DNA from: Camelus ferus
Taxonomy: Eukaryota
Length of the DNA: 64,000 nucleotides
Direction: 5' to 3'
Assembly (NCBI RefSeq): GCF_009834535.1
Contig: NC_045727.1
Span: forward strand, 13,516,001 to 13,580,000
Of the stretch, positions 521 through 32,006 are shown one piece after another. The translations under genes were made by a program, and so were the position numbers. Numbering within the stretch: position 1 is the first letter of the stretch; every line of letters begins with the position of its first letter. Under the pieces are notes generated by a model. The model did no database searches. It saw nothing but the letters and a program-made list of their open reading frames with translations, and was not told the DNA's origin.

Positions 521-827
521 CCCAAATCCACCCCCTCCAGGGTGCACCTGTTCCTTCCTGCCTCTGGTTGTTTTCTAAAACTGGGTTTTCCTTCTGGGAA
601 TGTACTTGTCCTGTACCTCATACTCTCAAGGCACCCCCACCTTTATTGCCAGAGCACCTGCCAGTTCATATATCAAGGGCATAGGCTGTCCTTTCTCCCT
701 CAGGAGCCCCAGGTGCCAGCCCTGCCCCTGCTGCTATTGTTTTGTGAAAAGTGGGTACAGCCCACACCTCTCAAAGCTTATCTCCACCTGTAGGGTGGAT
801 GATCCCGAGGCTGGGAGGGGCACCTAC

Positions 828-1060
828 CTGTCAATGGGGTGGATGATAATGGGGATGACCAGTAGCCCCAGTGCGGTGGTGGTCCACTTGCGGACAGCCA
901 GAGGCCAGCGGGTGGCAGTGCCCAGGACGTAGAGAGAGGCAGCACACACACGGTTGATAGTGAAGCCTGGGATGGCCACAGAGGCCAGAGCCTGCCACAC
1001 GAAGGTGTCCACCACGGCCACGGTCACCCTGGTGCTGCGGCCTGCCTCAGGGCTCGGCAT
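828..1060 (-). CDS. MTFP1: MTFP1 coding exon 3 (233 nt)
   Basis: cag|ATGCCGAGC ... GACAG|gtagg. Confidence 0.95.
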
Positions 1061-2354
1061 CTGGTAAGCACAAGAGACACTTCATCCAGAAGGGGCAGAG
1101 GTGGGAAAGCTTGTGGACAAGAGGCATGAGGCTGGACCAGGGGGAGGGAAGTGAAGGGGGTGGGGACAGAGCCACACTAGTGTTGGGTTCTGGACTTGAC
1201 CAAAGCAGGGCTGAGGGTGGACTCGTTCACAACCAGGACTGGGATAGAAACTATGCCACATGCAGGGCAGGGGGACAGGGTGCACCTTCTACATATGGGA
1301 CTGGGGTATTGGACTGTCCCGCAGGGACTTAACCACAGGCAAGGCTGTGGACTGACCACAGTGGGAGTGAACTGGGGTGGGGGTTGAAGGGCAGGTTAGC
1401 ACTCACATCTCTTGCCTTCTTGCCCTTGTCGATGGCATCGGCCAGCACATAGGAGCTGGACACACCATAGCTCAGCCACACAACAGCTGCTGGTACCAGG
1501 GAGCGGAAGGCCTCCCCTACTTCATTGGCGTAGCCTGGTGGGGAGGGGATGTTTAATTCCCAAGCCCGTGGGTTGTTCCACGAGGGGACACTGGAGGAGC
1601 TGGTTCTTAGCCTGCCAAGCAGTAACTGGGTGACCTTAGACAAGTGATTTTACCCCTCTAAGCCTTTCTCCTGGCCTATAAAATGGCACCCTTGACTGCC
1701 CACCCCGACTCTCCCTGTGTAGGAGAGTTGAGTACCGCCACCTTTCTCATCACTCACTTGCCTTCACAGACTGGGTTCTGGGAGCATCTGAGCTGATGGG
1801 AGAACAGGCAGTGAGAGAGACTCACTAAAGACAGCCCCACTCACCATATGCCTGGCCTCTCTGCGCCTTATCTCATTCTGCCCTCACAACGATCACTCAG
1901 TGAGAGAGACCCTGTGCTTATCCCTTTTTGCTAAGTTGGAAACTGAGGCTCAGACAGAAACAGGGAGAAGCCAAGATGGGAGTCCAGATACCCTGACTCC
2001 ACAACCACTGCCCGGGCATCCAGAGAGGGCAGTCAGCTCACCCTGTTCCTCCCAGCTGGGTTGCAGCTCCCACCTGGGAGATAGACCAGCAGACCCGGAG
2101 GGCAGGGCTGGGTAGAACAGAGCTGTGTGACCTTGAGCAAGTCCAGAGACCTCTCTGAGCCCAGTCTCTGCCCTGGCTGAATGAGAACTAAGATCCTCCC
2201 ACCTTCTCCAGGTTACTGAGCGGCGTTTGGCAACCCCTCCTTCCCGCCACGTGGTGTGGGGTCGCGGTGCCCCTCGCCCGCGCTCACCCAGGTACCGCAC
2301 CCACGTGTCCCGGAAAAGGTCGCGCTCGGCCCCCCGCGGGGGCATCTCGGACAT
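828..2354 (-). CDS. MTFP1: Mitochondrial fission process protein 1 (MTP18), spliced, 3'-partial; exons 2288-2354, 1407-1534, 828-1060; final exon outside window
   Basis: Spliced translation MSEMPPRGAERDLFRDTWVRYLGYANEVGEAFRSLVPAAVVWLSYGVSSSYVLADAIDKGKKARDMPSPEAGRSTRVTVAVVDTFVWQALASVAIPGFTINRVCAASLYVLGTATRWPLAVRKWTTTALGLLVIPIIIHPIDR matches MTFP1; exon sizes 67/128/233 nt, GT-AG junctions in frame; expected neighbour of SEC14L2. Confidence 0.97.
1407..1534 (-). CDS. MTFP1: MTFP1 coding exon 2 (128 nt, phase-1 acceptor)
   Basis: cag|GCTACGCC ... AGAGAT|gtgagt. Confidence 0.95.
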
Positions 2355-2510
2355 GGCGCTTCCGCTTCGGCCTCAGCCACTGCAGCGGGTCCTACAGCCT
2401 CGGCTTCCACCAGCCTTGCGGTCCGTGGCGGCGGGACCGGCCGAAGGTCCGGGACTGAAGGACAGGTCGTGCTGTCCCCGCCAGCAGGGAGCGTCTGCAA
2501 ATTCCCCCGC
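2230..2510 (-). promoter_or_regulatory. MTFP1 CpG island / promoter and first exon
   Basis: CpG-dense segment around the ATG; ETS-like CGGAAG immediately upstream of the start codon. Confidence 0.8.
2288..2354 (-). CDS. MTFP1: MTFP1 coding exon 1 (67 nt)
   Basis: gcgccATG start; CTGG|gtgagc donor. Confidence 0.95.
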
Positions 2511-2604
2511 GCACTGGCACCCCTTTCCCAGGCTTGCGTTTTGCAGATTAATTTTCTTCATGTCTTCTCTGGAATTGAGTGATCCTCTTCCAGCACTGAC
2601 TGTA

Positions 2605-2800
2605 GCGCTGGAGCCAAAGAGACAGAGGTTCAAATACGGGATGCTGCATTTCATAGCTGTGTGACCTCAGGCAAGTCCGTACTTTTCTGAGCCTCTCTTT
2701 ATTCATTTGTTACATGGGGAACAGGGCAGGTTCATTCCTGGGATGGTTTCGCGGATTGATTATACAGTCATCATTTGTTGAGTTTACACTACTGACCAGA
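2605..2800 (+). mobile_element. MIR SINE fragment
   Basis: gaggttcaaat ... agctgtgtgacctcaggcaagt ... tctgagcctc core. Confidence 0.6.
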
Positions 2801-2869
2801 CTGTTAGCCAAGGACTCTAGACGGATCTCTTCTTTAAACCCTCCCACCAGCCTGGGACATCCCCCCACC

Positions 2870-2990
2870 CTGCCCCATTTTATAGATGAGGAATAGAGAC
2901 AGGAAAAATACGTCACTTTCCCAAGTCATACAACTGCTGAGTAGGGAAGCTGGCATTTGATTCCAGGTAGTGCTGCTCCAATTCCCATGC
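2870..2990 (-). mobile_element. MIR SINE fragment
   Basis: ccccattttatagatgagga ... cccaagtcatacaact ... atttga core. Confidence 0.6.
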
Positions 2991-3679
2991 TCTTAAGGTG
3001 AGCTCAGTATATGAGGCTAGGGAAGCAAATGGTGAGCATCCTGGTGAGGTGAATGCTTGGATGCCCCTTCCCGGCAGGTGCCATTGCTCATCTGTCTAGC
3101 ACGGGGGTTTAACTGGACCGAGCCTCTTGAAAAAAGAACTTTGAGTGAATGAATAAATGAATGAGGCTGGGGTACAAAACTTGAGGAAAATGAGCAGAAC
3201 AGAATGAAGAGACTTGGGGTTGATTACTAAAGAGGAAACTCTTCCTCTACTGGACCTCAGTTTACCCACTATAGCTCTGTGAATCCTTTGGGGGTATTAG
3301 CGAGCAAAGGCACGGCCTTTAATGACAGGCAGTCCTAGGTCCAAATCCCAGTTGTGTCGCTTATTAACTGTCGGCCACGTCTGTGAAAAAATTAGAGTAT
3401 CTAATATTTACTTAGCGTATACTTGTATGCTAACTGCTCTGCATGATATTTCTTTGAATCTTTGCAATTACCCAAGGCGGTAAGCACAGGGCTGTTGCGT
3501 GGTACCCAGTACGCGCTCACTAAAGAAATTTATTATCATCAAATAAAGATCATAGGCTCCCTACTGAGGGCCCTTGTTTGCAGCCCTGGGAATCTCTATC
3601 TTTGTAAGAGCCTGTAGTACAGCCAATTCATCGGTAATCTTCCAGGAAGTTGGGCTAGGGGGCCTAGGCGATCCCTAGC

Positions 3680-4030
3680 CCCGGAAACATTGGCAGTGCC
3701 TGCGCGTAATTAGGAGACGGTCCCTAACGCCACGTGATCGCTGCTTCTCTGCCACCCTCTAACTCCAGGCCCACCGCAGGCGCTGCGCGCGCTCGCTAGA
3801 CCCGCGTTTATTAGCGCGCTTTGAGAAGCCCGAGTGGGGCGGGGCTTCCGCCCTAACCGTGAAGGCTGACAGGAACACGCTTTGCCCTTAGCAAAGATGG
3901 CGGAAGACAGTCGACAAGTTACGCCAATCAGGAAGCATGCTGGCGCCGTGAGAAAGCGCACGCGAGTAGCAGGTGGTTTCTGCTCATGCGCCCCGCTTAT
4001 TGGCGGGTAGGCGCTGGGCTCCTGAGGCGA
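3680..4030. promoter_or_regulatory. CpG-rich promoter-like element between SEC14L2 3' end and MTFP1
   Basis: E-box CACGTG 3731-3736, GC box GGGGCGGGGC 3836-3845, YY1 AAGATGGCGG 3894-3903, CCAAT 3924-3928 and ATTGG 3999-4003, NRF1-like GCTCATGCGC 3982-3991. Confidence 0.65.
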
Positions 4031-4106
4031 AAGTTTGGCCGAGTGGAGGACAAGCACGAGCAAGGCGGAAAGCATTGACTTCCACTCCCTGCGCGCTGAT
4101 CGTTGC

Positions 4107-4112
4107 TTTATT
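4107..4112 (-). terminator. SEC14L2: Likely SEC14L2 poly(A) signal (AATAAA)
   Basis: TTTATT on + about 1.4 kb past the inferred stop; flank resembles the human SEC14L2 3'UTR as recalled. Confidence 0.6.
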
Positions 4113-5517
4113 CACTGGTTAATTTTCCTAACAGACCATTGTAAACCGAAGTTAGGATGTCCTCCTGAGGAGTCTGGGAGAGCCCGTGCGGCCTCGTGCC
4201 CTCCTGTCAACGCCAGCCTTGCCCCTGCCCCCGCTCCTTCAGCTTCGCCAGCTCATCTCCCCAGGCTGCGCCAGGGCCTGGTGTTCGTTTGCAGGATGTG
4301 AAATTGGGTTAAGAGCTGATTGCGCACAGGGTCCGTGCCCTCCAGCCCCTGGTCGCTGAGCGCCTCCCCATGGCCATCCCTGCTTGTCACCGTGGACGGA
4401 AGGGCTGGGGGCCTGCGACGCTCTTTGTGGCTGCTCCCAGCCCCTGGTTCTGCCCGTTGCTTGCCTGGTCTTTGGCTTCCTGCCGGGCAGCCTCCCCAGC
4501 AGACACCAGGAACCCACTGCACCCATCATACGCCTCCCAGAGACGGGACTGCTAAGGCCTTGCTCAGGTCAGTCAGGAAGCGGGCTGTTGGCACCGTGGG
4601 AGACTCAGCCTGGGAAACGCCCTCACTGAGATCTACTGTCTTGATCCCCCTTGTCATTTTTGTGTAGGGTGCTGAAGTGGAGAGTTACTTGGTGAGAGGC
4701 AGGCAGTACTGAAAACAGGAGTGGAAGCCTCAGAACTCAGACCCACCCCCAGCCTCCTTGGCCCTTCACAGACCTGGGATCCCAGGAGGTAACTTCCTCG
4801 TGCTTTGTTTGCATTGGAGGACAGTGGCTGGGTACCAAAGTTCACTGCCCCAGGAAGCTCTGAGTCACGGACAATCACTAGTAATTAAAGAGGCAGCCAG
4901 AGAGACCCAGGAGTTGCTGAATTCCTCAAGGTGAGGGAGAGGTCTGCCTGTCTGCCTCTGAAAGGGAAGATCTATGCCAACTTGGGCCACCTCCCGAGAC
5001 CTGGGTAAAGCCAAAAAACCCCAGCCCTGGTAGTAGAAAGTCCAGAAGAGCCTCTGACCCCCACCATCATTAGCAACTGGCCATCTTTCTACTCCTCATT
5101 ATGATCCAGACTTACACGTTTACTAGGGAGCAAGTTCCTCCCCTGCAGCTGGTTTTCCTGAGGTGTTAGGTCTCAGTCTCTCCCCTTTTCCTAATTTCTT
5201 TCCTGCTGCCACCCCATGGTACCCCCTTTCCTGTCTCAACTGTCACTGGATAGGTGAAGTTGGCACAGCTTACAAGATAGACTCTGCCATGATGCCCAGC
5301 CCCTCAGGAATCCTTAGTAATTTGAGAGGTAAGGAGACCCACTCCAGCTACTCTCCCTCTTCCTAATTCTGAAATGAAGGCTCCCCAGATCCAGCCCCGA
5401 GGTCTTTCTTCTAGCCCAGTTTCTCTGGGCGTCAGAGTGCTGGGAAGATGACTGCTACAAGGGGTAGAAACTGACAGGGAGACACCGAGGGAGCCAGGCC
5501 TGCTGTGGGAGAAGGCA

Positions 5518-5665
5518 NNNNNNNNNNNNNNNNNNNNNNNNNNNNNNNNNNNNNNNNNNNNNNNNNNNNNNNNNNNNNNNNNNNNNNNNNNNNNNNNNNN
5601 NNNNNNNNNNNNNNNNNNNNNNNNNNNNNNNNNNNNNNNNNNNNNNNNNNNNNNNNNNNNNNNNN
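5518..5665. other. SEC14L2: Assembly gap (148 N) that should contain the ~131-nt coding part of SEC14L2 exon 12
   Basis: Left flank (- strand tgccttctcccacagcaggcctgg...) resembles the start of the human 3'UTR as recalled; no exon-12 sequence found elsewhere. Confidence 0.8.
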
Positions 5666-8600
5666 AACCCAGATATTCAGGCAGTTCTGACAAAGAACTT
5701 AGAGACAGCGATTTCTGTTGACTGTGCAAGGCAGTGTAGTAGGTAATGAGGATGAAGGTGGCATAAGCAAAGGTCCTTCACCTTCTGACACCTCGTCTAG
5801 CTGGGTTATAAGATGTTCATGGAGAGAAAAAAATATAAGAACATGCCAAGTGCCAGATGAGAGACGGAGAAAGTCATAGCTGTAACAGCTCAGAAGGAGG
5901 AGGCCCTATAGACAGAAATCATGTGAAGAGCTTTTTAAAGGAGTCAGAGCTTGAACCCAGTCTTGAAGGCGGCTGAGTGTTGAATGAGTAACAGCAATAA
6001 TTGTCGTAATAATAATAGTAATGGTAATAATGGCTATTTATGTGTTTCAGCACTGGGCTGGCAATCTATATATGTCACTCACAAGAACTCTTGAGTTCAG
6101 CATTGGTCCTATTTTATATAAAAAGGAAGTCACTGTGTCACACAGTGAGGAAGGATGGAACTGGGATTTCCCTCTGGTCTGCACTGCTGCCTGACTTGGG
6201 CCCTGGAAAGCCCAGCTCTGTTCAGTTTCTGACAAAAGGTAAAATAGGCAAACATTCTGAATCAGGAATTTATCCCACAGAAGGAGAAATGGACAAAGAT
6301 GCTCAATGCAATAATAACAGATGCAGGAAAACTCCAATGTTCAAAGGAGAGTTGCTTTAAAAGTTTTCATTGCAATCCATATGATGAAATAGTATTCTGT
6401 ATCAAAAGAAAGAGGTTAGCTTTATAAGAAGTGCCAGGGCAACTGACAACAATACAGCCTTAGGCCAAAAAAGCAAGTTGCAGAACAATTTGTAAATAGT
6501 TTCTAATTTTTTTAATATATGTAAAAAAAAAATTGGCCTTTTCTACCTACACTGACAAGTTTTACAATTTCAGAATTCCTTCAAATATACACTGAATGAC
6601 AGATATAATTCCTATGAATGTAAATGTGTGTGTACATGTCCTGTATTTTATGGAAACATGTAATGCTTCTAAAGGGACGGCAAATATTTGGTAGGGTAAC
6701 AGACAAGACCTGTTAGTGGTTTCCTCTGGGGAGAGAAAATGGGCATGCAGTTGGTAGAGAAGGCTTCCAAGCCTTGGCCAAGGAACAGACTGCTTTCAAA
6801 CTAACCCTTGTGTTTTTGAGAAGTTGTTCCATGTCAGTCAGACCCCCCTTCAAGAGAACAGAGTGTGAAAATGAAAACAGTAGGCCTGCCCCTTCCCTAT
6901 CCTGGTCTTTTCTCACTTTTCCCAGCCCAAGACCAAAAGCCAAAAACACTGTGTATTTAATCCTAAGACGTAATCCTTCTCCTTTTCTGCCCCTGGATAA
7001 AATGCATAGTTTAGACTGAGAGTAGACACACCACCCACCCTGTCTTCATGGTGTAAAGTGAGGAATAGTCATTGATTTTCTCTCTGTGCCAAGGTCTTTC
7101 AGGGCCAATGGTGCCTCTGGAAAGAGGGAAGCTTCCTGTCTGCCCTGGATGACGGAGCGTTAGCAACCAGTCAGTCCTGCTAGAGGAGAAGTCTGAGCTC
7201 CTTGGGCCAAGCAGCAGGACTGCGATGGCTCTGCCTAGCGGGACAGTCTGTCCTCAGAAACAAGGAAGGGGCTGTTCTGAGGCCCATGCCCGAGGGAAGT
7301 GGCGTTCGTAAACTGTGGGGGTTCGTTCTGACACTAATCATGTACTCAGAGACTCGGGGAGCCCCCAGAGATCCTCCAGGGCTCCTTCACTTTTGTTGGG
7401 GAACTGATCCTCTTGAGAATCTGATGAAAGCATACAATTTCAGATCCCATGGAGCCCACCTTAGACCTTCTGGGGCAGTGGTTCCCGGGGGCAAAGCTAC
7501 CATTCTGAAGAGACAGGTGCTGGTGTAACTCTGCCTTCTCATTTATGTCTTGAGAAAATACATATATATATTCTAAATTAGCTTCCTTTTATTTCTCATT
7601 TATATTCCAAGTAGGAGAGTATACTGACTTCTTAGTTATGTATGTAGGTGGGTTTTAATACCTGTGAATTTCATTTCAGAATAGTAGAGACATGAGACAC
7701 TATTTACTATAAAAGGGAGGTGTTTGGTCTTTAAGATTTAGTTATCACTGCTCTGGAGAGTCACAAACCCCAGATTAACATCTCCTGCTCTAGCTCACTC
7801 CCCTCGTTTTAAGGAAAAAGAGAGCAAAATCTAATTATGTGGAGATACTTGTTCACTCGTAGAGTTACTGGCAAAGCTAGACTCAGAAACCAGGTCTCCC
7901 AGGGCCCAGCTGGGCTGTTCAACCTTCACACAGCGCTTCAGCTCCGCTAGACCACACTGTGTGCTCTTGGCAGACAAATTCTTGGCAGACAAAGTCCAGA
8001 TCTCTTTTTCTGAATCTTTTTCTTTCCTAGCAGGGTATTCTACACTTAGGATCTCAGGAAATATTAGTTGGGAGAAGAAAAAGTGAAATCACTTCAAACT
8101 TTGGTTCTCCTCCTCAGTAACTGGGTGTGGTTGGGCCAGGACCAGAGCGGCCCTGGAGGGTTAAGGCAATCTTGCCACTGGAGACTGGTGCAGAGTTTTA
8201 ATGTCTCCACTGGGTGATTATGTTCCACTTTACAGGGGGGCGCCTCATTCAAGGGCATCACCGCCCCCACCCCCCACAAGTGAGCTTGTAACCTAACTCT
8301 GGGTGCTTACTGGGCTCAGGTCTAACCTGAGTCATGGCCCAGAGGACTGCCGATCCCACCTCTGTCTTTACACCTGGGGAGGGGACATGGATGCTGGGGT
8401 CTGCCTATGCTCTTCCCAAGAATGGACAATAAGCAGCTCCCAGGCGAGGCCCCACAGGCAGTTACACATTCCATTTGGGAATGTATCCAAGAGGAACTAA
8501 AATTTGGTATTTGCAAACATAAGTCTGATTATGCTAAAAGGTTCACGGTCCTACATGGTACTACAGAGAGGTAGCAGGCAGTGCTGGAAAATGGGTTGGA

Positions 8601-11600
8601 CTTGGCTACTGATCTTGGGTAAATTACTTCCCTGGTCTGGGACCCCGCTCTGTCCTCTGTCCCATCAGGGGTGGACGTGATCAACTCTAATGTAGGCTAT
8701 GGCCAGGAGCTCCTGCACCAGGACCCTAGGATTCTCTCGTGTCTTGTCTCTCGGTGTCCGTGGATGCTCCATTGGGGGAGCAATAACATCCCTTCTCTAT
8801 AACTCAGCTTCCCCGCCCATTAACACAGAGAAAGTGGAGCTTCTGTGGATGACAGTGTCTGGGCTGGTGCTAAGCTTTGCTCTCGATGAAGCCACAGTAC
8901 ACGCCTTCTCCCTCAGGACCTGGCAGCTCGCTAACGAGAATACTTCTCCTCCCTGGGGAGCCAGACCACAGAGCATCTGTGAGGAGGGGGCGGTAGAGAC
9001 TGAAGGTTGCCTGTGATGTGGGGGAGATCGCAGGATCTGAGGCTGGGGTGATGGTGTGGACAAGTACAGAGGCTGAGACATTTGTGGGGCTGGTTCAGAC
9101 CTCCTGGTGGTGCTGCCGTAGAAATGCGGCATGGGGCTTCTCGCATCTCTAGCCCTTCTCCTCCAGGTCTTGCCCTAACAATGACCATGCTGGCCACAGC
9201 GTGCTGAGTGCTGTCTGGCAGGCATTACGCTAAGTGCTGCACAGACCTTATCACGTTTCACCATCAGGTGTCCCTGTGAGGTAGAGAATTTGATCCCCAT
9301 TGTAGCAATCAGGAAACTGAAGCTCAGGGAGGCTAAGTCACTTGCCTAAGGACTAGTCAGTGGTCAAGTCCATCTCAGATCAGTGATCTTCCATGCCCGG
9401 CCCCTTGGCTTGGACAGAAAGGAAACCAGAGATTTGATGAGGGTTTCATGTGTGCGTATATGGTTTTTCTGCTTATAATGTAGTACATAATCTTTGTAAA
9501 ATTAACTGTATTTGCAGAGCCAGTAGAAAAAAACAAAAGCCCTCTATAAGCCTAATACCCTAGAGAGAACCACCATTAGTGTCAGCATAGAGTCCCCAGA
9601 ATTCTTTTCCCTTTCTTATAACCAAAGTATACTATATAAGCTATGTCTCATGCTTTATTTTTTTTATAACATGTCAGTTTATTCTCTTTAATGGGTATAT
9701 TGTATATTGTATTCCATTGTATGGATGGGCCATGATTTATTTAACAAGACCTTCTTAAGGCCATTTAGCTTATTGCCAGCTTCCCAAGCTGCTGGGAACA
9801 TCCTTGTACCTGTATCTTTGAGTCTTTTTATAAATATTTCTGTAGGATAAATTTCCAGAGATAGAATTGCTGAGTCAAAGGGACTTTTAATCGATACTGC
9901 AAAGCAGAGCAAGGTTAAACAGCTTTCCGAATGCCGACTTGCCATTCGTTATTCCTCACGGGTAAACTTCCTGTTCCTGTTCTGTGCCCCTTTTTTGGAT
10001 CAACCTGGAGATGAGTGAAGCTCAGCAGAGTCAAGGCTGGGCTTGTTAGCACTCTGCCCGCCTGTGATCCCGGTGCCTGCCCAGCCAGTTCTGCCTCTCT
10101 GCCATCTGGGGAAGGGGCATCCTCAAGAAATGTCTGATGACAGTCACAGAGCCAGCCGGAGCTGGACCAGAGAGCAGACATTCTGAACCCCTGTGACCAC
10201 CCAGCCCTGTGACTCACCTATGCCGGGGGAGTATCGCTCAGCATCCTGCCCTGCTCTTGACCAGCTCGGCCACCTTGAGCTGGTCATCTCACCTGTTCGG
10301 GCTGAGGTGTCCTCATCTATGTAAGGAGAGGGTGGGGCTGATGGAGCTCCAGCCACTTCTAGTTCTAAGAGTCTGAGAGCCTAAATCCATGGACAAAGAG
10401 GGACCTCTCAGGCAGACCGCTAGGGCAGGGGCTTCAAGCCAAGACAGAGGTACTTACAGATGCCAGGATCGCTGCAGGTGAGGGTCCCATCCTCAGGGAC
10501 CAGGTGGGCATTGTACCTCTGGTTGGCCAGCACCTCCGTCATCTCCCCTGCCCGCTGCCGCTCCCCCATCTTGGTCTTCAGGAAAATCCCGAAACCGATG
10601 TCCGAACCATCCGACATGAACTGCCACCTGCAGGGCACACCCACCCATTTAGACCTGATTCTGTCTGCGTGTGCCCTCTCTGGGGTCCTGCCAAGAGGGC
10701 TTCCCCTACCCCAGCCCATCCACCAGCACCTATGGCTAGAAGGATCAGGTCCTCTGGAAGGGTCCAGAACCCTACCTGAGGACGCAGCCGGGGAAGAGGA
10801 TCTCATACTCCACTTGGTGGGAGGAGCCCCGGGAAATCTGCACACTGTGCTCATACTGCTGCTTCACCTGGTCTCGCACGTAATACTTCTTGGGGATGTC
10901 GCCCCCGTAGTTGATCTGGAAGCAGAGCATGGAGTGAGCCGGATGTGCACTTGAGCCAGGCGTCCCTGGTCACCTCCAGCCCCTGGCAGCCCATACCTTG
11001 GATTTACACTTGGGGTTTCCATCAGGGTCAGTCATGGTGCCCCCATACTCCACGGGGAGCTGGTCAGGGCTGACATATTTCAGTAAAACCTCCTTCCAGT
11101 TCGCTGGCAGGAGAGGGAAGGAGGGAGAAGAAAGAATCACCACAGGCAGAATTTCATCACCGCCCTGGAGGGCTGCACAAAACAGGCAGGAAAAAACCCC
11201 ATCCACCCCTGCACACACAACACAGCCATTGGGAGCACATGGTGTACACAAACTCTGCAAGGGGGCTGGAGAGGAGCCGCCACCCAGGGCTGCCCTGCTC
11301 TGGACCAGGAAGCCGGAGACCTGGGGGCCTGTCCCCACGGCCTCTGGCCAGCTGATCAAGCTGAGGCAAATCACTTCATTCTGAGACTAGTGCCTCCTGC
11401 CCTGCAAGGTTACGGTGGGAGTGAAGTCAACTAAGTATGTAAAGAGGGTGTTGTAAACTGTAAAGTGCCCTACCTGTATGAGAGTGTATTCTCACTCCCA
11501 GGAAGGTGATACAAACACCTGAAGTGCAAGCAGAGGGGACAAAGAGAGGGAAGGACATTCCACGCAGAGGGAACAGCACATGCATGCGGCAAGCAAGAGG

Positions 11601-14600
11601 ACCTGAACCAACATGATCTGCCTGAGTTAGACTGAATGTGACGGCACGACCATGTGTCTCGTCCCCCACTGTCACCCACTGTGCCCAGTCATGATTTAAT
11701 GAACTCATCACTGTAGAGTGGCCCCTTAAACAGGGTCCCTTGGCTTTACCCCAGCCACAATTTCACTTCTGCTTTTGTTTGGCCACCAGTGATTTGGCTC
11801 GTTTTTAAATAACCAAGCCCTTTCCTGGCTAGGAGGGTTTGACTCAAGGGCAACCAATGCTGACATCCACTTCTCTGCCATTCCAGATTCCTAAACAAGT
11901 ATCAGCCACGGACAGTATTTCGATACTGGAAACCTCTCCATGCTGACTACAGAGACCAGATATGGGCAGCAGCTCCAAGTCCCGGAGTACCATGCGCCTC
12001 CTCTGTGGCAGGTGCTGCCTGGAAACCCACAGGGACGGTCCAGGGTCTCCCAGCCCTCAGATTTCTGGGGACCTGCGACCAGGCAACTGCAGGGACATCG
12101 TGCCTCTTGTCTCAGGGGGCTTGCATCTGTGCTAAGCTCCAGTGACCAGCCCAGGGTGAATTTCTTCCTTCCTCTGTTGAAGATCCTGTACCTTCCCAGC
12201 CTGAGGCGGGTTTGGTTGAAAGGGTTTCAGGTGTGGGTGGGGGAACAGACTGAACCTCCTCCGCAGCTTGGCTGCCAGGAAACCGAACACGCTCATGCTC
12301 GTGGTGGGTGGCAGCCGCAGAAAAGCCAAAACTCATCAGAGCCTTTTGCTTAGATTTTGTGTGTCATCCCCCAGCTCAGCTGGAGGGTTGGAACAAGGCC
12401 AGGAGGACCCCTCCCATCTTACAGAGAGAGGACTGAGGCAACAAGGGGCAGAACTTGCTCCAGAGCCACGAGAGGTGCCCAGAACCCCGGGCTCTCCAGA
12501 CTGCCTTGCGCCACCCGCAGGGCTCAGCACATATCTGGAAAACCGCTACTTTCAGTGCAGTGCCTAAAGGTGAACACTGAGAAACCAGAATTTCCTGCCT
12601 CCGAGTTCAACTCCACGGGTGGCGCTAAGCCGTCCCGGAGCTGGTCGCAATCTGCCTTTCTAGGCTTTTCTCCCACCGCTCCATGTCGTGCTCCAGCAAA
12701 CCTCGAATGCTGTCTGTCCCTGGCTGGCTTGAGTCCCGTGTGTCGTCTTCATTGGCTCTCCCTTGTCCCCTGATGTTCTCCTGGCTTCCCTGACTAGCCA
12801 ATCCCTGTCCACCTGCTTCCCCGCCAACCTCGCCAGTCACTTCCCCTTCTCCCTGGGGGGTTCCTTTTTCTCTGACTGCCCTCGAGCCTGGATAGCCCCC
12901 AGGTCCAGCCTCTGTCCTGTGGGTCTTATCTTCTCCCAAGGGTTTAGTTGCTGCCTCTCTCTGGTAACTCCCAAATCTCCAGACTGGAGTTCGCTCCTAA
13001 GCTTCAGGCCCAGATCTCCCCAGCTCACAGTATCTGCACATCCCACGGACTCCTCAAACCCAACTTCAGGCTTATCCTTCGTTCCCCAGTCGAACTAACT
13101 GCATCAGTGTGACGGCAATAGTCACCCATGCCAGATACAGGGAGCCATTCAAGATTTCTCTTCCTCCCTTCCCACATCCAGTCAACTTAGCTCTGCTCCT
13201 CCACTTCCTACAGAAGTCTGAAATCCATCTCTCCCATCCCTACCGCCCCCGCCCTGGCTCAGGCTGGCAACACCTGGTGTGTGGACTGTGGCCAAGGTGT
13301 GCAAACTGGTACCTGTCCTTCACAGTCTCACCAGTACTCCCCGGCTCAGAGCTCTTCTCTGGTTCCCAGGGGCCTGCAGAGTCACATCCCAGCGTCCCAG
13401 CACGGTGCCCTGGACTCTCTGCAACCTGGCTCCTGGCGCCCGGCTCCTTCTCCATGCCATCTCTTTCCTCGCCCTGCCATGCATGCCAGCTGCCCATGCC
13501 GCAGGGTGTAAGGTCTTTGCTCGAGGCTCTTCCTTCTGCCCAGTAGCTTCTTGCCTGGCTTCTCTTGCTGCCCTGCTCATTCCAGATCTCTCAGCACCGG
13601 GAGGCCTCGCCCCCTCCCCAGGTCAGGCCGGGTGAGTTCCCTGGCTCAATGTTCCCACGCGCTTTCCGAGTCCTCTCTTTGACACTGGACATCTCACGCT
13701 GATACACATCTGTTTGTGTCTCCCTCCCCGAGAGGCCACGAGCTCTGCAAGGGGCCCCGTCTTAACCATTGCTGCCTCGGCACCTGGTCCAGGGCCTGGC
13801 AGACAGCAGGTGCCCATCAAGTGAAGCCACGCGTCCTTGCCCCCATCTGAAAGTGACCCCTGCTCCTGTGACCTCCACGGCACCTGCTCTGTGCTGCGTC
13901 CGTGCCTTTTCTAGTTTGAGTCCTAGCTTTTTCTCTAAAGGTCTCTCTCCCATTTCACTGCAAGCTTCTGGAGGGCAAGGACTGGTGTTTCATTCATCTT
14001 TGAATTTCTTCCAGAGGGTCTGAGAGAAAGAGTTCTTAGGAAAACAGGCAGGAAGTCTCCTGCTCAGCCCCAGCCTGCTCCTGGGTCCCACCGCTACCAA
14101 ACCAGCAAAGGGAGCCTCCACCCAGGCCGCTGTGGCCGCATCTCTATGGCCATCCCCAGCTGGGCCCCAGGAGTCTGGGCTACTCACCCCCCAGGACCAT
14201 GATCTTCTTACGAGTGTCCTCACTCAGGAAGGGTTTGATGAGGTTATAGGCCACAGGAAACAGCTTGGGGGCTGGAACAGAGACCAGGCAACGTGAGGCC
14301 GGGCCCAATGCCCTCTGTCCCCAACAGCGTCCTCCACAGCCCCCCGTGTCAGGCCACACGCTCCCTTTCCCATCTACACAGTGGGGATGGTCCTCCTACC
14401 TCACCAAGTTGGGTGTCTTGAAGGAGGTAACAAATAATGAAACTTTGTGAATATAAATCGGTCTGCGTACGTCATGGGTTGGTCTTCAGAACGTGTCCTC
14501 ACACCCGCCGCTCTGCCTGTGGCTCACTCTATTTCACTCTCCTGACTGTCCCAGTAGTACTTTTGGCCCCTCTTTCCCATTTGGCTTCATCACAGGTTGT

Positions 14601-17600
14601 TCCCAACTTACCTTTAACAATAAAAAGACGCTTCAGTGTTTCGGGATAATTTTCCTCAAACATGCAGAGGAACTGTGGAAACAAAATCACTAAGTCCAGC
14701 GGGCTCAGATCTCTCGGCTTCCTCTGACTTCCCCCACCGCCTGGGCCTCCTGGCAGAGGGGCCCACCCCATCTCTTCCCTCCCATCCCACGCCCATGCTG
14801 GCCCTCACCTCTCCATAGGCCTCCACAGCCGGCTTCCAGAGATGCTTGAGGCCAAGCCCCTCACAGTCGTAAATCAGGGTGATGGTCTCTATCTTCTTCC
14901 CTGTCTGCAGGGGACAGAGGAACAGAAAGTCACACCAGGCTGCTCCCCCCGACCACTGCAGAAGCCCACCACGGTTCAGGGAAAATGCTGATTATACCTC
15001 GCACCCCTGTTGCAACTAGATCTGTGCAGGCCCGGCTCTAGGATTTTCCAAATCAAGATAATTACCCCAGGCCGGAATTGTGGCCTAGACAAATCACGCG
15101 TCCTGTCTAGATCTCCGTGTTCTCATCCAGTAAACAACTGGGTGGACCGAGATTACATCTGAGGTTCCTTCTGTTCTGCAGTTTGACTTGGCAGCCTCCC
15201 TCTTCCTCTGCACCCCTGCAGGGCTCGGGCCGTGGGGCCTCGTGGGGCCCTCACCTCGTAGGCACAGATGCTCTCTGTCCAACCTGAGCCCTTAGGGTGC
15301 ACCCCTGTCTAATGCTTCTCTGCATCCCGAGCCCTGTGGGGCCTCCGCGCACAGTCAACGTGGACGACTGTTGAAACGTCCCCAAGCGTATCACATCGTT
15401 TCACTGGATCTTTACAACTGCTGAAGAGGAGGGAAGGAGACAGGACCGTGGTGGCTCCGGCTTGCTCTTCAGTCTGTTTTCAGTAAGAGAATCAGTGTCC
15501 TCATCTTTGTTTGAATACAGGGTTAGAGGGGCACAGACTGCGAGCTCATCGACACCAGTCCAGCACCCAAGTACTTGTCCAAGGAGAGGGTGGTCAGGGG
15601 CAGAGATTCCACTGGTGCCCAGATACATAAGGAAATAACAATAATGTAGTATGTTTCTTATGAAGCTAAATTTTATTCAATTTAAAGGACTGCCCTTTAT
15701 TCTGAGTTTATGCCATCCCTGTAGTTTGGGGGGTTAATTATGGCAATAATAGCTGGTAAGTTTTTTCTAAGTCCTCACTTGAGAAAATTAAAATTTGGCC
15801 ACATACGTCAGTCCCTAAAACTGAAATTTCATTGGCCTGGGGCTTAGATCCCTGTGTGACATCCCCGCTCCTGCTTGAATGCCTCCACTGTGCTTCACTT
15901 CTTTTCGACTGTGCAGGTCCACCCACCTTTTCCGTCTGGCGGGCACACTCCCGCAGAAGCAGCTCGCAGTCCCGCATCTTGGTCCTGAGTAAGTCCTGTT
16001 TGGAGGCTGAGAGGAGCAGACCCTTGGCATCCAGAGGTCCAATGATGTCATACCAGATCGGGCAGCCGTCCAGGTCGTAGCCACACATACCCCCGGACAG
16101 ATACTGTTGGACCACCTGGGCCAAGACAGACAGGAGGCACCTGGTCAGCAGGCCCAGGATGGCCACGCCTTTCCCACGTCCAGGGCCTTCCTCGGGGTCC
16201 ATCCTCCCCTGGGTGCCTGTGGATACCCACTCTGGGAACTGTGAGGGCTCACTCAACATTATCAGACCTTTCCTCTGAGGGTCCCAGTCCCACAGTCCCA
16301 GGACCCAGACTGTGGGTCTAACAGACCTAACGTAGGGATGGGTGGGATAGTCGGTCCTCACCTCTGGAGGCTGCCAGCTCTCGATGTTGTCAATGTCCTT
16401 TTGCTTTCGGAACTCCACATGCTACAGACACACAATCAGGGCTTTAGACAAGCAGGGCCAGGGTGGTGGGGGTGATCCTTAATAGGCATCGAGCAGTGAG
16501 CAACAGCACGAACGGACCGCCAGACCACAGGTAAGTCACGAGAAGGCAGCTGGCGGGAGCAGAAAAGAAGGAGCTGCCTGTTCTCCAGGCCTCAGCAGAG
16601 CAGATTATAGTTCTTGGCTGGCCCAGAACTATGAAAGCTCTGTGTTTCCAGGGAAGGGAATGCCCTTTGTCCCAGAGGATAAGGCAGTAGGGGTCAGGTA
16701 ATACTCAGATTTTTTGTCACATAAGCCACAGGCTGTGATCAGGGTGGGAGGGGTGGATAAGTCCAAGCGCGGGATGATTCTCGGGGGCAGGGATGAGGCA
16801 GCAGTGGGTTCGGATCTCACCTTCCGAAGCATGGCCTCGGACTTCTGCAGGTCAAAGCTTCTTGCTGTAACAGGGAAAGATGGTCAGGGTTAGGCCAGCA
16901 GCCTGAGTGCCAGGGACGGGGAGACGTCCCTGTTCCCGTGCTGGGGCCCCAGCTGACTCTCAGATCACCCCGCATGCAGAAGCTAATGTGAGGGCATTCA
17001 CTGAGGGCTTCTGGAAAACCACAACCCCGGGGCTTGCAGGGAGAGCAGGTTCAGGGCAGGTCAAGGCAGCACCGCAAGTTCAGGGTCAAAAAAGTTTGAC
17101 CCAAGTGGATGCAGTCGGGTGAGGGGTCTTATCACCTCTCAGGGAAAGCAAACCCTGGATCCCCTCATCACAGAGCCTTCTCTTTACACAGTTAACCGCC
17201 TGCACAGTCTAACTTCCAGTCCTGCGAACTTGACCTGCAGTTCAAAGATGAACACAGTTGCCCCATAATCTGGGGCAGAGCTGGCAGAACATCCCAGCAG
17301 GATGGAGGGAGGGGTGATGAGACTTGAGTCAAACTTGCCAGGTCCTCCTCCAGGACTCACACGTAACCCCCGGGAACACAGAGGGCCTTCCGCCTCCTCC
17401 GGTTCCTGGAAGGTTCCAGAACTAGAATTCACCTGGGCTAGCTCAATTTTATGCACAAACCACAACACACTGTCCGGCTCAGGCCCAAACACAAAGATTT
17501 CCCTGTCCCTCAACGCCACCTGCTCCCAGACAATCTGAGTTGCCATTTGCACTCAGCCCTCGTACTGAGCCGAGACCCTCTCAGGAGACACGCAGAGAGG

Positions 17601-20600
17601 AGGCGGGCTTCCTCAGCCACGTGACCACCTTGCCACTCTAAGTCCCCGCTATTACACAGCCCACCACAGACATCATCAGCCATCCTTCACAGCTCGGTTT
17701 CAAGTCCACGCAGACAACTTCCCTTTGGATGTTTTCCAGTTTGCCATCACCTCTCGAGTGTGTGGTCCAGAGCACAGGTGTTGTCTACCCTTCAGTTAAA
17801 TGCAGGAACTTTTTTGGCAATGGGCCAGACCCTTAACTCGGGTGACACAGTCAACTGAAACCCCCAAATCCTTTCCACCTGTGCTGCTGCGTGGGCTCTC
17901 TCCCAGATGCCATGAGGTGGTTTTCTGGATCTACCCCTGTCAGATTCCACCTTGTTACAGTCAGCTGCATTTCATCCCTTAAAGACTTTCTGAGAACCAG
18001 AAAGTTTTTTTTTTTTTGCCATCAGACCTATAAACTGTTCATCCTCTGTGGATCAGACACCCAGATCTGCTGACAGCTCTGGAACCTGGGCCAGACAGGC
18101 TGCCCTCTGGACTGTCACCGGTCCCTTAATCACTGCTCTCCGGGAGTGGCCAAGCACATTCCCTGACTCTGCTATCATGAAAAGCAGCCCACTCTCCTGT
18201 GTCCAAAGGGTGAATCGAGATTTGACCAATGCCACGCCCATTGTGGGTGCTAGACACACGTTTCCAGAAATGAGCAGCCTTCCGTCCTGGGGAGTACCTT
18301 CTGACAGCCACACTTCATGTGCCATGGTGGCAGCAGGGGACAGCTTTCAGAGGAATATAATCTGGTTATGCATCTCAGCCTTCCCATTTTCTCCCTGTTT
18401 GACCTTGGACAAGATACTGCACATCTCTGGTCGGATCATCTAATGAGCTAGAAACACTTGGAAGATGCAGGGCACCATGCTATGATGATGCAGGAGCCCA
18501 GCTGGACCTGAAAGCGGGAATCCTCCACAGGAGGGTCATCCCCAACTGTGAGGAGTCATCTTCCTAGGGAACAGGTGTGGTGGTGAACTGTGATCCCCCT
18601 TATCTCAGGGAAGCTCTCCAGTTAACCCTTATCTGCTGGAGTCCAACATCCAGGGTTCTCCAGGGCCCTCTCCGAGTTACCACTGCCCCTGGCAGCACCA
18701 GCCTGATGCCTCCCCAGGCCTGCTGAGTCAGACTTCTCCAGGGCTCCTGCCACCCTGGTCAGGGGCAGCTCGAAGCATGACTTAGGGCACTGCCAGAGAA
18801 GCCGGCCTGAGAGCAGCTGTCCTGGGTTCTTATTTGATCGCTTTCTTGTCCTGGAAAAGGAGACTCAGTCCTGCTCTGCCCCGCTCACAGGGTTTCCAGC
18901 ACCTCCTTGTTTTATTCTTCCATCTGACCCTCCCTGCTGAGGTGCCAAGACTCAAGCACGGTCAGGGGGAGGCAGCAGAGATTTGTGGGACTGCTCTCAG
19001 GCCTGGGGACCACAGAAGACTGAGCCCATGTTGGGGAAGGAGGAAGGGAGGAACCCAGAGCTCACTCACACCTACGTTAGAGGAAGACATTGGGCATGTG
19101 CCTTGTAAATGTTTTCTTTAGAAAGAAAAGGTTTCTTAAAAAAAAAAAAAAAAAAGGGAAAAAACCAAGCAAAGCAAGGCAACAAAAACCCTAATTGAAA
19201 TTCACAGTAGAGCAGTGACCAGGCCTGAGCTCCTGCCCAGGGAAATGTGAGGCACAAATAGATACCTCCTCTGCTTGCAAGAGGCAGGGCTTGGCTTTGG
19301 GGGACAGTGGGGGCTTTCTGGAGAGGACTGCTGGCCAGGGAAGCAGGGGCCCTACGTTTCTGCCTGATTCTGCTTCGCATTAGCTGTGTGCCCTCAGGGT
19401 AAGTGCCCTCCCCTGTCTGAGCCTCAGTTTTCTCATCTGGCAAATGAGGATGACCACACTCTTCTACATGCCTGCAAAGAGAGGGGTTATCCCAGGACTG
19501 GGGAGTTGGTGGTGCCTGATAAACCAACTGCCAGGGCCCCGGGCTGGCCTTCTCTTAGATAAGAGAGAGCTGCAATGTTATTCAGTTCAGCAGCTCTCTG
19601 AAACCACACTTGCCCCCCAACAGTAGCCGGGGAGTTTGCCTGATCATCTTGCGGCTGGCCCTTTAATGCAGCGCAGTCTTCCCACTCTCCCCACCCACCC
19701 ACTTCTAGCCAAAATATCCTCCAGCTCTGGACAGACTCCACAGCCGCCCCCTCGCTGCCCCTCCACCCTCTCTGAGTGGGCAGAAGTGTGTGTGGGGGTC
19801 ACAGCTTTTTGGGAGGAAAAGGGCAAGTGGCACCTCCAGAGGCACACAGGGCCCCACGTGGCTCTCCTAGCAGCATCTGCCCTGGGGCACCTGCTGGCAG
19901 CTGCTCAAGACCCTGACAGCACTACTCAGTTCCTGGACAGAAAGGGAAAATACATCACTTCACCTGTCCCAAGACTCCGAGGATATGTATGTGTGTGTCT
20001 GAGTCTGTAAACAGTCAGCCACGATTTGTACTTTAGCATTTGGGACTATGATTCTATATCATGATTTAACCTCTGCTAATCTAACACAGAGGAGGAATCT
20101 TCTCTATTATTTCTATGTCTGGCAATAAAGTTTCTAGAAAGAAAAAAAAAGTATGTCACAAGAACAGGAGAGGGTGGCACGTGACTTGAATCCCAGGAGA
20201 GAAGAGAGAAAAGAGGAAAGATTTCAGGAGTTGGGGCATGGGGTTGAGTTTGACCCTGATGCCAGTACAGACATGAATACTTCATCACCATGGGCACAGC
20301 TCTGTCATGTCCCATCTTAGCCATAGACAGGGCACCCTGTTTCATCCTGCTCTCCCAGAGAGGAGCCTAAGACAGATGTTCACTCCTGGCCCAGGTACCA
20401 GAGGCAGGCCAGGGCAGAGCTGGAATAGAACTTTGGGCTCTGAAGCCAGATGGTGGCTTGAGAGGAGTTTCGCTACCTAGGTCGGGCCGAACCCCCGGCT
20501 CCCCGTGTTCTCCATACACTCTGCGCCTTCTTCAAGCAGCCTAAACTGCTGGCAGCAGGCGGCCTGCCCTCTCAACAGGCCACAGAGGGGCCCTGCCTCT

Positions 20601-29748: not shown

Positions 29749-29901
29749 GGGGAGGATATAGCTCAAGTGGTAGAACATATGCTTAGTGTGCATGAGGTCC
29801 TGGGTTCAATCCCCAGTATTCCCTCTAAACATATGCAAATAAATAAACCTAATTACCTCCCCCTGCCAAAAATAAAAAAAATTCTTTAAATTAAAAAAAA
29901 A
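29749..29901 (+). mobile_element. tRNA-derived SINE (camelid vic-1-like), full length
   Basis: A box TAGCTCAAGTGG 29759-29770, B box GGTTCAATCCC 29803-29813, AT-rich body, aaataaacctaattacctcccc, poly(A) tail. Confidence 0.85.
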
Positions 29902-31462: not shown

Positions 31463-32006
31463 TGAAACCGTGGGGTCATGACTCAAACCCACTTCACCTG
31501 CCTTCACTCATCAAGGTCATTTTAGGACTTGAATGTTCTCCACACAGCACATGGCCTAAACAATAAAATGTTTGCCAGAGCTACTTTCCAGAAACTTAGA
31601 GTCAGCTGTGTCTAGTTGGAGCTGAGCTGGTTGAGACTGGGTAGGACCACTGACCCTCCAAGGAACATGCTGGAGCATGCAGTTCCGTGACCTTTGGATA
31701 TCAAAGGGCTGAAAAGTCCACCCTCAGATCACGCGATGAACATGCAGAGGCCTGCAGCTTAGTTGCGCCTGTGCAGAACGAAGATTACCTACCTTTTCCC
31801 GATCACCCCACCCACGCCTCACCGCTCGGCTGCTTTATTCCTCATCCCATGAATACGAGCCCCTTCAGAGAGGCGGATTTGAGACTTGTTCCCCTATCTT
31901 CTCACTTGGCCACCTTGCAGATTAAACCCTCTCTTTGCTGCGAACCTTGGCGTCTCAGTGTTTCTGCTTGCTGCGCAACGGGCAAAAGGAACCTGGTTCG
32001 GTAATA
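31463..32006 (+). mobile_element. Solo ERV LTR (544 bp; ERV1-like)
   Basis: TG...TA termini (CA decayed), 4-bp TSD ATTG/GTTG, internal ATTAAA 31921-31926, splits an L1 sequence. Confidence 0.75.

What the first reader, a model, noticed from the sequence alone, without database searches (positions are those of the whole stretch)
1407..10627. In-frame SEC14L2-MTFP1 chimera is possible: lipid-transfer domain fused to a mitochondrial fission protein
Seen: both genes are on the - strand, with MTFP1's ATG ~1.75 kb beyond SEC14L2's poly(A) signal. SEC14L2 exons 1-11 total 1081 nt (phase 1) and MTFP1 exon 2 has a phase-1 acceptor, so the splice ATC T|GC TAC reads ...SDPGI-C-YANEVGEAF... without a frameshift. 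Donors of exons 2, 7 and 8 are also phase 1. Known: SEC14L2 carries a CRAL-TRIO pocket (tocopherol, phosphoinositide, squalene-related ligands) and MTFP1 is an inner-membrane protein. I recall a human SEC14L2-MTFP1 read-through annotation but cannot verify it here. Inference: a ~504-aa chimera (if MTFP1 is 166 aa) could tether a lipid carrier to mitochondria. With the canonical exon 12, the read-through end and the 8870-8976 exon, the exon-11 donor would choose among four C-termini.
Basis: partly seen in the sequence, partly recalled or inferred. Interest (0 to 1): 0.7.

Follow-up and report, generated by a model that had tools for sequence, protein, structure and literature searches.

The report
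Possible SEC14L2-MTFP1 read-through, unproven
Two ordinary neighbouring genes (a lipid-binding protein gene and a mitochondrial membrane protein gene) could in principle be spliced together in frame, but the frame match is what chance gives, no RNA or protein evidence for the fusion was found in mammals, and the fusion would lack part of both proteins.

Summary
SEC14L2 exons 1-11 sum to 1081 nt and end in phase 1. MTFP1 exon 2 (1534-1407) has a phase-1 acceptor, so a 10458->1534 splice reads ...DPGI-C-YANEVGEAF without a stop. The match is at chance level. Four of 11 SEC14L2 donors are phase 1 and six are phase 0, which fits the phase-0 acceptor of MTFP1 exon 3.

Canonical exon 12 is not readable anywhere in the window. 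Its expected place is the N gap at 5518-5665. MTFP1 exon 4 lies outside the window.

Three protein-database searches found no mammalian SEC14L2-MTFP1 fusion protein, and the literature holds none. Three bird gene models do join SEC14L2 exons to MTFP1 exons: quail exon 2->exon 2 in frame, a frameshifted kestrel model, and a blue tit model from exon 11 whose junction abuts an N run.

The predicted chimera would lose the last 43 residues of the GOLD domain and the first 23 residues of MTFP1.

Verdict: ordinary tandem genes. A rare read-through RNA is plausible (about 30%), a functional fusion unlikely (about 3%).

The parts
10776..23237 (-). SEC14L2 coding exons 1-10: 23237-23184, 21094-21019, 16864-16821, 16421-16362, 16115-15927, 14904-14809, 14672-14612, 14271-14188, 11103-10997, 10915-10776. 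The donors of exons 2, 7 and 8 are phase 1.
   Evidence: Assembled by hand with AG/GT borders into one open frame of 911 nt. Exons 5 and 6 give weak CRAL_TRIO Pfam matches.
10458..10627 (-). SEC14L2 exon 11 (170 nt), ending in phase 1. Its donor GTAAGT lies at 10457-10452. This is the proposed 5' partner of the chimera.
   Evidence: Its translation aligns over all 56 residues, with three substitutions, to residues 305-360 of human SEC14L2 chains 1O6U/1OLM (E 5e-32). It scores better than SEC14L3 or SEC14L4.
10420..10457 (-). Read-in end: if the exon 11 donor is not used, 12 further codons follow and then TAG at 10422-10420.
   Evidence: Translation.
8870..8976 (-). Candidate alternative last coding exon. 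The acceptor is ...CCCCCTCCTCACAG|AT. It gives 35 in-frame codons and then TAG at 8872-8870.
   Evidence: Sequence and translation. Its use in RNA was not tested.
5518..5665 (.). Assembly gap or masked stretch of 148 N. This is the expected place of the canonical exon 12 acceptor and its coding part of about 131 nt.
   Evidence: No exon 12 motif is found anywhere in the window, and the gap sits directly upstream of the presumed 3'UTR.
4090..5517 (-). Presumed SEC14L2 3'UTR, ending at the AATAAA signal (4112-4107), which is followed by a T/GT-rich stretch.
   Evidence: Sequence. RNA runs hold 0.48-0.63 of the words of 800-5517. The assignment to SEC14L2 rests on the hidden exon 12.
3600..4200 (.). 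CpG island (observed/expected 0.83-1.10) with two CCAAT boxes, a GC box, a CACGTG box and a GCCATCTT motif. It lies directly downstream of the SEC14L2 poly(A) signal and 1.3-1.8 kb upstream of the MTFP1 ATG.
   Evidence: and reading. RNA runs hold 0.25-0.51 of the words of 2560-4090. Strand and function are unknown.
2288..2354 (-). MTFP1 exon 1 coding part (ATG at 2354, 67 nt, phase-1 donor CTGG|GTGAGC), inside a second CpG island at 2600-2200. The chimera would skip it.
1407..1534 (-). MTFP1 exon 2 (128 nt), with a phase-1 acceptor. This is the proposed 3' partner of the chimera.
   Evidence: Pfam MTP18 PF10558, E 5e-07, 30.3 bits against a cut-off of 25, profile positions 25-63 of 171.
828..1060 (-). 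MTFP1 exon 3 (233 nt, phase-0 acceptor). Exon 4 lies beyond the window's start.

Best explanation
This is the ordinary tandem pair SEC14L2 -> MTFP1, two separate transcription units.

- SEC14L2 ends at a canonical AATAAA signal. MTFP1 starts about 1.75 kb further on at its own CpG-island promoter, and a second promoter-like CpG island lies between them.
- The frame match between the exon 11 donor and the MTFP1 exon 2 acceptor is real. It is a by-product of conserved intron phases, not a designed feature.
- If polymerase reads through the poly(A) site, the exon 11 donor could occasionally pair with the exon 2 acceptor and give a rare read-through (cis-spliced) RNA, as happens for many neighbouring genes.
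- I put about 30% on that junction being detectable in deep RNA data of this animal.
- I put about 3% on it making a working protein.
- The product would keep the CRAL-TRIO pocket. It would carry a GOLD domain cut at residue 360 of 403 and an MTFP1 part without its first 23 residues.

Shown: the anatomy, the phases and the domain cuts. Inferred: rarity and lack of function.
For: Anatomy and phases:
- The phase match is at chance level: 4 of 11 donors are phase 1 and 6 of 11 are phase 0.
- A canonical AATAAA signal and two CpG islands lie between the genes.

No trace of the fusion in mammals:
- No paper names the fusion. It is absent from the held supplements of two chimera catalogues.
- None of the best 150 MTP18 representatives is longer than 374 aa.
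- Searches with length windows of 186-593, 215-684 and 159-506 aa found mammalian MTFP1 variants (P0200, P0170, P0215) but no mammalian protein with both domains.
- Among 264 fetched proteins that carry the YANEVGE motif, none has the DPGIC junction.

Domain cuts:
- Exon 11 ends at residue 360 of the 403-residue solved chain.
- The Pfam GOLD_2 match on a full-length bird orthologue spans residues 329-381.
- A low-confidence model places strands at 359-366 and 375-384, mostly encoded by exon 12.
- MTFP1 exon 2 starts at MTP18 profile position 25.
Against: - Splicing from SEC14L2 donors into MTFP1 exons is annotated in three birds. Quail A0A8C2YDD9 joins exon 2 to exon 2 in frame. Kestrel A0A8C4UF06 joins a donor inside exon 12 to exon 2. 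Blue tit XP_023793663.1 starts from the same exon 11 donor. The pair is therefore prone to being joined.
- RNA libraries from two studies hold 25-51% of the words of the intergenic stretch, which is compatible with read-through.
- The exon 11 donor (GTAAGT) and the exon 2 acceptor are both strong.
- The chimeric mRNA would escape nonsense-mediated decay.
- No read-level test could be run, so rarity in this animal is assumed, not measured.
Confidence: 0.75

Rival explanations
1. A genuine, regulated conjoined gene. A SEC14L2-MTFP1 mRNA (exon 11 to exon 2) is made on purpose and gives a protein of about 504 aa. That protein would anchor a CRAL-TRIO lipid-binding domain to the mitochondrial inner membrane through the MTFP1 part.
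For: - The junction is in frame and follows the 2-2 rule.
- The CRAL-TRIO part (exons 3-8) would be intact.
- The tandem arrangement is also present in a bird (locus L001).
- Bird models link the two genes.
- The stop codon would lie in the last exon, so no nonsense-mediated decay is expected.
Against: - The frame match is at chance level.
- No mammalian fusion protein appears in a collection of 5.8 billion clusters, and no literature exists.
- The GOLD domain is cut before its last strands, and the conserved MTFP1 N-terminus is lost.
- The three bird models use three different junctions, and none is a clean domain fusion.
- A canonical poly(A) signal and a promoter-like island separate the genes.
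Confidence: 0.03
2. The fused reading is encouraged by missing sequence. Because the last SEC14L2 coding exon is hidden in an N stretch, a reader or a gene predictor is pushed to the next usable acceptor downstream, which belongs to MTFP1. The chimera would then be an annotation artefact and no such RNA exists.
For: - In the blue tit locus the RefSeq model XP_023793663.1 jumps from exon 11 (ends at L001:5414) over an N run (5416-10806). It lands on an acceptor about 20 nt after the run, 43 nt upstream of MTFP1 exon 3.
- In this window exon 12 is likewise unreadable, with a gap where it should be.
Against:
- The quail and kestrel models are not explained this way.
- Read-through chimeras are common in general: 4 of 20 random neighbour pairs were positive (PMC4450057).
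- I cannot tell whether the N run in L001 is a true assembly gap or masking.
Confidence: 0.2
3. The RNA signal in the 'intergenic' stretch comes from an independent transcript, not from SEC14L2 read-through. That transcript would start at the CpG island at 3600-4200. It could be an upstream alternative first exon of MTFP1 or a divergent non-coding RNA.
For: - The CpG observed/expected ratio is up to 1.10, with CCAAT, GC-box, E-box and YY1-like motifs.
- RNA runs hold only part (25-51%) of the words of 2560-4090, as an exon-intron pattern would give.
- Database MTFP1 variants with other N-termini joined at the exon 2 acceptor exist.
Against: No strand, start or splice information could be obtained. 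The partial word share could equally be nascent RNA or DNA carry-over.
Confidence: 0.25

Closest known systems
Read-through / cis-SAGe chimeric RNAs between adjacent genes (e.g. SLC45A3-ELK4, CTNNBIP1-CLSTN1; rules in Qin et al. 2015, PMC4450057)
   Same: Same-strand neighbours well within 30 kb. [quoted passage not shown]
   Different: Those chimeras were shown by junction reads, RT-PCR and sequencing. Here no RNA evidence exists for the junction.
Quail Ensembl/UniProt model A0A8C2YDD9 (P0224, 289 aa, named MTFP1)
   Same: A SEC14L2 phase-1 donor is joined in frame to the MTFP1 exon 2 acceptor (...LKWLR-G-YANEVGE).
   Different: It carries only SEC14L2 exons 1-2, so no lipid-binding domain. 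It comes from a bird and is a single automatic model whose supporting RNA I could not inspect.
Kestrel Ensembl/UniProt model A0A8C4UF06 (P0227, 391 aa, CRAL_TRIO + MTP18)
   Same: SEC14L2 exons are joined to MTFP1 exons 2-4 at the same exon 2 acceptor.
   Different: The donor lies inside exon 12. Exon 9 is skipped and the GOLD part is read out of frame, so the open frame looks contrived rather than a domain fusion.
Blue tit RefSeq model XP_023793663.1 (P0311, 420 aa, 'SEC14-like protein 2')
   Same: It uses the same exon 11 donor (...TPGI-C...) and continues into MTFP1.
   Different: It lands 43 nt upstream of MTFP1 exon 3, not on exon 2. The junction abuts a 5.4-kb N run in the locus as served, so it is probably caused by missing sequence.

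Membership tests
Read-through (cis-SAGe / conjoined-gene) chimera | Parental genes are adjacent on the same strand | tested here: met
   Both genes are on the minus strand with SEC14L2 upstream of MTFP1.
Read-through (cis-SAGe / conjoined-gene) chimera | Intergenic distance under about 30 kb | tested here: met
   1753 nt from the AATAAA signal (4107) to the MTFP1 ATG (2354). The rule comes from PMC4450057.
Read-through (cis-SAGe / conjoined-gene) chimera | Junction at annotated exon borders, typically second-to-last exon to second exon | tested here: inconclusive
   The sites exist and are canonical. Their joint use was not observed.
Read-through (cis-SAGe / conjoined-gene) chimera | Chimeric RNA shown by junction-spanning reads or cDNA | not testable with these tools
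Read-through (cis-SAGe / conjoined-gene) chimera | Transcription continues past the 5' gene's poly(A) site | tested here: inconclusive
   RNA runs hold 0.25-0.51 of the words of 2560-4090. Strand, continuity and DNA carry-over are unresolved.
SEC14L2 (CRAL-TRIO plus GOLD lipid-binding protein) | Sequence match to solved SEC14L2, better than to its paralogues | tested here: met
   Exon 11 scores 111 bits against SEC14L2 (1O6U), 99 against SEC14L3 and 87 against SEC14L4.
SEC14L2 (CRAL-TRIO plus GOLD lipid-binding protein) | Complete C-terminal GOLD domain (to residue 403) | tested here: not met
   This applies to the chimera. It ends the SEC14L2 part at residue 360, while the Pfam GOLD_2 match spans 329-381 in an orthologue. 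For the normal gene, exon 12 is hidden by the gap, so it is untestable.
MTFP1 / MTP18 (PF10558) | Pfam MTP18 match above the curated cut-off | tested here: met
   Exon 2 scores 30.3 bits and exon 3 scores 37.7 bits against a cut-off of 25.
MTFP1 / MTP18 (PF10558) | Full domain including the N-terminal conserved segment (profile positions 1-24) | tested here: not met
   This applies to the chimera. Exon 2 starts at profile position 25 and exon 1 is skipped.

The most novel reading that the evidence does not exclude
SEC14L2 and MTFP1 form an old conjoined gene kept since before birds and mammals split. Read-through splicing onto the MTFP1 exon 2 acceptor would be regulated. The exon 11 to exon 2 isoform would place an intact CRAL-TRIO lipid pocket on an inner-membrane MTFP1 scaffold, linking tocopherol, squalene or phosphoinositide handling to mitochondrial membrane dynamics.
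Probability: 0.03. Interest if true: 0.6.

Novelty: new member of a known kind. Interest (0 to 1): 0.17.

Why it matters
If the chimera were real and translated, it would be a rare natural case of a cytosolic lipid-transfer domain tethered to a mitochondrial inner-membrane protein. It could be tested with one RT-PCR.

As the evidence stands, the value is mostly practical:
- The exon map and intron phases of both genes are now fixed for this window.
- The last SEC14L2 coding exon is shown to be hidden by the gap.
- The bird models show that this gene pair is prone to being merged by annotation pipelines, at least once next to missing sequence. That is a warning for anyone annotating this locus.

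Tried and rejected
1. Read laying. I sent window:800-6799 with three RNA runs and one DNA run.
   - The Rfam scan started at 1000.
   - Later protein searches used database proteins, restricted to regions that end before the equivalent of that stretch (P0053:188-280, P0227:247-326, P0224:103-185).
2. Literature. 'SEC14L2-MTFP1' gave 0 papers. The 10 papers that name both genes showed no link in the listing, and the one opened has them only in gene lists. Read-through terms combined with MTFP1 gave nothing.
3. A lead from my own memory. I recalled AC004997.1 / RP1-130H16.18 as the read-through gene. The papers place it at GATSL3-TBC1D10A, not here, so I rejected it.
4. Supplements of chimera catalogues. 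There were no hits in PMC2953495 or PMC11128028. None are held for PMC13721984 or PMC12721320.
5. Representative search with MTFP1 exon 3. No hit among the best 150 was long enough to be the chimera. This is a weak negative, because a fusion could sit inside a SEC14L2 cluster.
6. AlphaFold model of a bird SEC14L2 from 12 bird and caecilian sequences. Quality was poor (mean pLDDT 47.9), so I used it only as a weak pointer to strands in exon 12.
7. Earlier findings of the scan. Nothing relevant.
Full report
**What is there**

On the minus strand the window carries SEC14L2 followed by MTFP1. I rebuilt the SEC14L2 coding exons by hand from open frames and AG/GT borders:

| Exon | Coordinates |
|---|---|
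| 1 | 23237-23184 |
| 2 | 21094-21019 |
| 3 | 16864-16821 |
| 4 | 16421-16362 |
| 5 | 16115-15927 |
| 6 | 14904-14809 |
| 7 | 14672-14612 |
| 8 | 14271-14188 |
| 9 | 11103-10997 |
| 10 | 10915-10776 |
| 11 | 10627-10458 |

- The exons sum to 1081 nt and translate to 360 residues plus one base.
- Exon 11 aligns over all 56 residues, with three substitutions, to residues 305-360 of the 403-residue human SEC14L2 chains 1O6U/1OLM. It scores better than SEC14L3 or SEC14L4.
- Exons 5 and 6 give weak CRAL_TRIO matches.
- MTFP1 exon 1 runs from the ATG at 2354 to 2288, exon 2 is 1534-1407 and exon 3 is 1060-828.
- MTFP1 exons 2 and 3 pass the Pfam MTP18 cut-off.
- MTFP1 exon 4 is not in the window.

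**Check of the observation**

- The AATAAA signal at 4112-4107 lies 1753 nt from the MTFP1 ATG.
- The sum 1081 ends in phase 1, and the donors of exons 2, 7 and 8 are also phase 1.
- The exon 11 donor is ATCT|GTAAGT, and the exon 2 acceptor is phase 1 behind a good pyrimidine tract.
- The joined reading ...SDPGI-C-YANEVGEAFR stays open through exon 3.
- The 8976 acceptor opens 35 in-frame codons ending at TAG 8872-8870.
- Reading into intron 11 stops after 12 codons.

Two things do not hold up:
- Canonical exon 12 (residues 361-403) cannot be read anywhere in the window. Its coding part of about 131 nt would fit the 148-N stretch at 5518-5665, just upstream of the presumed 3'UTR.
- The 504-aa length rests on an exon outside the window.

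**The gap**

The scan's program asked for continuity across the gap to be tested first. My only read-laying run covered it (window:800-6799, three RNA runs and one DNA run).
- The chimera's frame does not depend on the gap, because both splice sites lie outside it and the gap would be spliced out.
- The competing exon 12 acceptor, and the assignment of the 3'UTR and poly(A) signal to SEC14L2, do depend on it.

**Is it more than chance?**

No.
- One junction has a one-in-three chance of being in frame.
- Four of 11 SEC14L2 donors are phase 1, with 3.7 expected.
- Six are phase 0, which matches the phase-0 acceptor of MTFP1 exon 3.
- So 10 of 11 donors are in frame with one MTFP1 acceptor or the other.
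- In frame, the quail model joins the SEC14L2 exon 2 donor to the MTFP1 exon 2 acceptor. The phases are therefore shared with birds and need no selection for a fusion.

**Evidence for or against a real chimera**

Literature:
- No paper holds 'SEC14L2-MTFP1'.
- The 10 papers that name both genes showed no link in the listing, and the one opened has them only in gene lists.
- My own recollection of a clone-based read-through name proved to be a different pair, GATSL3-TBC1D10A.
- The held supplements of two chimera catalogues lack both genes.
- General rules do fit. Qin et al. (PMC4450057) found that such chimeras join same-strand neighbours under 30 kb apart. They favour second-to-last exon to second exon, and 4 of 20 random pairs gave a product.

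RNA:
- RNA runs from two studies hold 0.48-0.63 of the sampled words of 800-5517 and 0.25-0.51 of the intergenic 2560-4090.
- So part of the spacer is present in RNA libraries.
- Strand, continuity and DNA carry-over are unknown.

Proteins:
- A full-library search with MTFP1 exon 3 gave no representative longer than 374 aa among the best 150.
- I then ran three word-index searches using long database proteins as queries, so that the length windows (186-593, 215-684 and 159-506 aa) would admit fusions.
- They recovered mammalian MTFP1 variants but no mammalian protein with both parts.
- Among 264 fetched proteins that carry the YANEVGE motif, none has the DPGIC junction.

**Bird models**

The searches did recover three bird models that join the two genes:

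| Species | Model | Structure |
|---|---|---|
| Quail | A0A8C2YDD9, 289 aa | SEC14L2 exons 1-2 joined in frame to MTFP1 exons 2-4 (...LKWLR-G-YANEVGE) |
| Kestrel | A0A8C4UF06, 391 aa | Skips exon 9, reads the GOLD exons out of frame, leaves from a donor inside exon 12 onto MTFP1 exon 2 |
| Blue tit | XP_023793663.1, 420 aa | Leaves from the exon 11 donor (...TPGI-C...), adds 14 residues translated from the end of MTFP1 intron 2, continues with exons 3-4 |

- In the blue tit locus (L001) exon 11 ends at 5414, an N run covers 5416-10806, and the model resumes about 20 nt after it. That model is best read as a product of missing sequence.
- The locus also shows that the tandem arrangement exists in birds.
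- Three different junctions, none of them a clean domain fusion, argue for read-through noise or pipeline merging rather than a conserved isoform.
- They do show that the MTFP1 exon 2 acceptor can be reached from SEC14L2 donors.

**What the protein would be**

- The chimera keeps CRAL-TRIO (exons 3-8) but stops the SEC14L2 part at residue 360 of 403.
- On a full-length bird orthologue the Pfam GOLD_2 match spans 329-381.
- A low-confidence model (mean pLDDT 47.9, about 62-67 in this region) puts strands at 359-366 and 375-384. By that weak model, most of the last two GOLD strands would be missing.
- On the MTFP1 side, profile positions 1-24 are lost.
- MTFP1 is a small inner-membrane protein (review PMC6056715).
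- Whether a 361-residue folded N-terminal passenger would allow its import is unknown. I consider it unlikely (inference).
- Fusions from the exon 7 or exon 8 donors would cut the CRAL-TRIO domain itself.

**Between the genes**

- A canonical AATAAA signal with a T/GT-rich downstream stretch is followed at once by a CpG island at 4200-3600 (observed/expected up to 1.10). The island carries CCAAT, GC-box, CACGTG and YY1-like motifs.
- A second island lies at MTFP1 exon 1.
- This looks like separate, insulated transcription units.
- The first island may be an alternative start for MTFP1 or a divergent transcript, which would also explain the partial RNA signal.

**Verdict**

- These are ordinary tandem genes.
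- The in-frame possibility is correct but at chance level.
- A rare read-through RNA is plausible (about 30%).
- A functional lipid-carrier tether is unlikely (about 3%).
- If found, it would be a new member of a well-known kind.

Noticed in passing
window 3600-4200: A promoter-like CpG island sits directly after the SEC14L2 poly(A) signal. It has two CCAAT boxes, a GC box, CACGTG and GCCATCTT. On the plus strand the YY1-like motif reads AAGATGGCGG, followed by a short open frame and a GTGAGA donor, so it could drive a plus-strand (antisense) transcript or an upstream MTFP1 start. RNA runs hold 25-51% of the words of 2560-4090.
   Followed up: partly
window 5518-5665: The 148-N stretch coincides with the place where the last coding exon of SEC14L2 (about 131 nt) should lie. 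Any automatic annotation of this assembly is therefore likely to miss or misjoin the C-terminus.
   Followed up: partly
L001:5414-10830 (blue tit, GCA_002901205.1 PDCF01000028.1): RefSeq 'SEC14-like protein 2' XP_023793663.1 is a SEC14L2-MTFP1 fusion model. Its junction spans a 5.4-kb N run, so it is probably an artefact of missing sequence.
   Followed up: yes
database proteins P0053, P0151 (Caenorhabditis bovis, C. angaria); P0223, P0298, P0299 (diatoms): MTP18 occurs fused to other domains in gene models. Two Caenorhabditis species have an N-terminal PAP2 lipid-phosphatase domain (339 and 328 aa). Diatoms have a mitochondrial carrier domain (about 500-520 aa). Recurrence in related species suggests some of these may be real fusions rather than merged models.
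   Followed up: no
window 29752-29824 (+), 32145-32201 (-), 62227-62298 (-): Three tRNA-model matches at or above the Rfam gathering score (44, 42 and 29 bits). One is partial (model positions 8-63). They may be tRNA-derived repeats rather than genes.
   Followed up: no
window 32717-32877: A second N stretch (161 nt) lies in a very AT-rich part of the window (GC 0.35 at 32001-34000).
   Followed up: no
database proteins P0022, P0021, P0261, P0266, P0427 (birds, some from RNA assemblies): Several bird MTFP1 variants have an N-terminus translated from the end of intron 1 (...PTIPSG-YANEVGE). This suggests that retention of intron 1, or an alternative start upstream of exon 2, is common.
   Followed up: no
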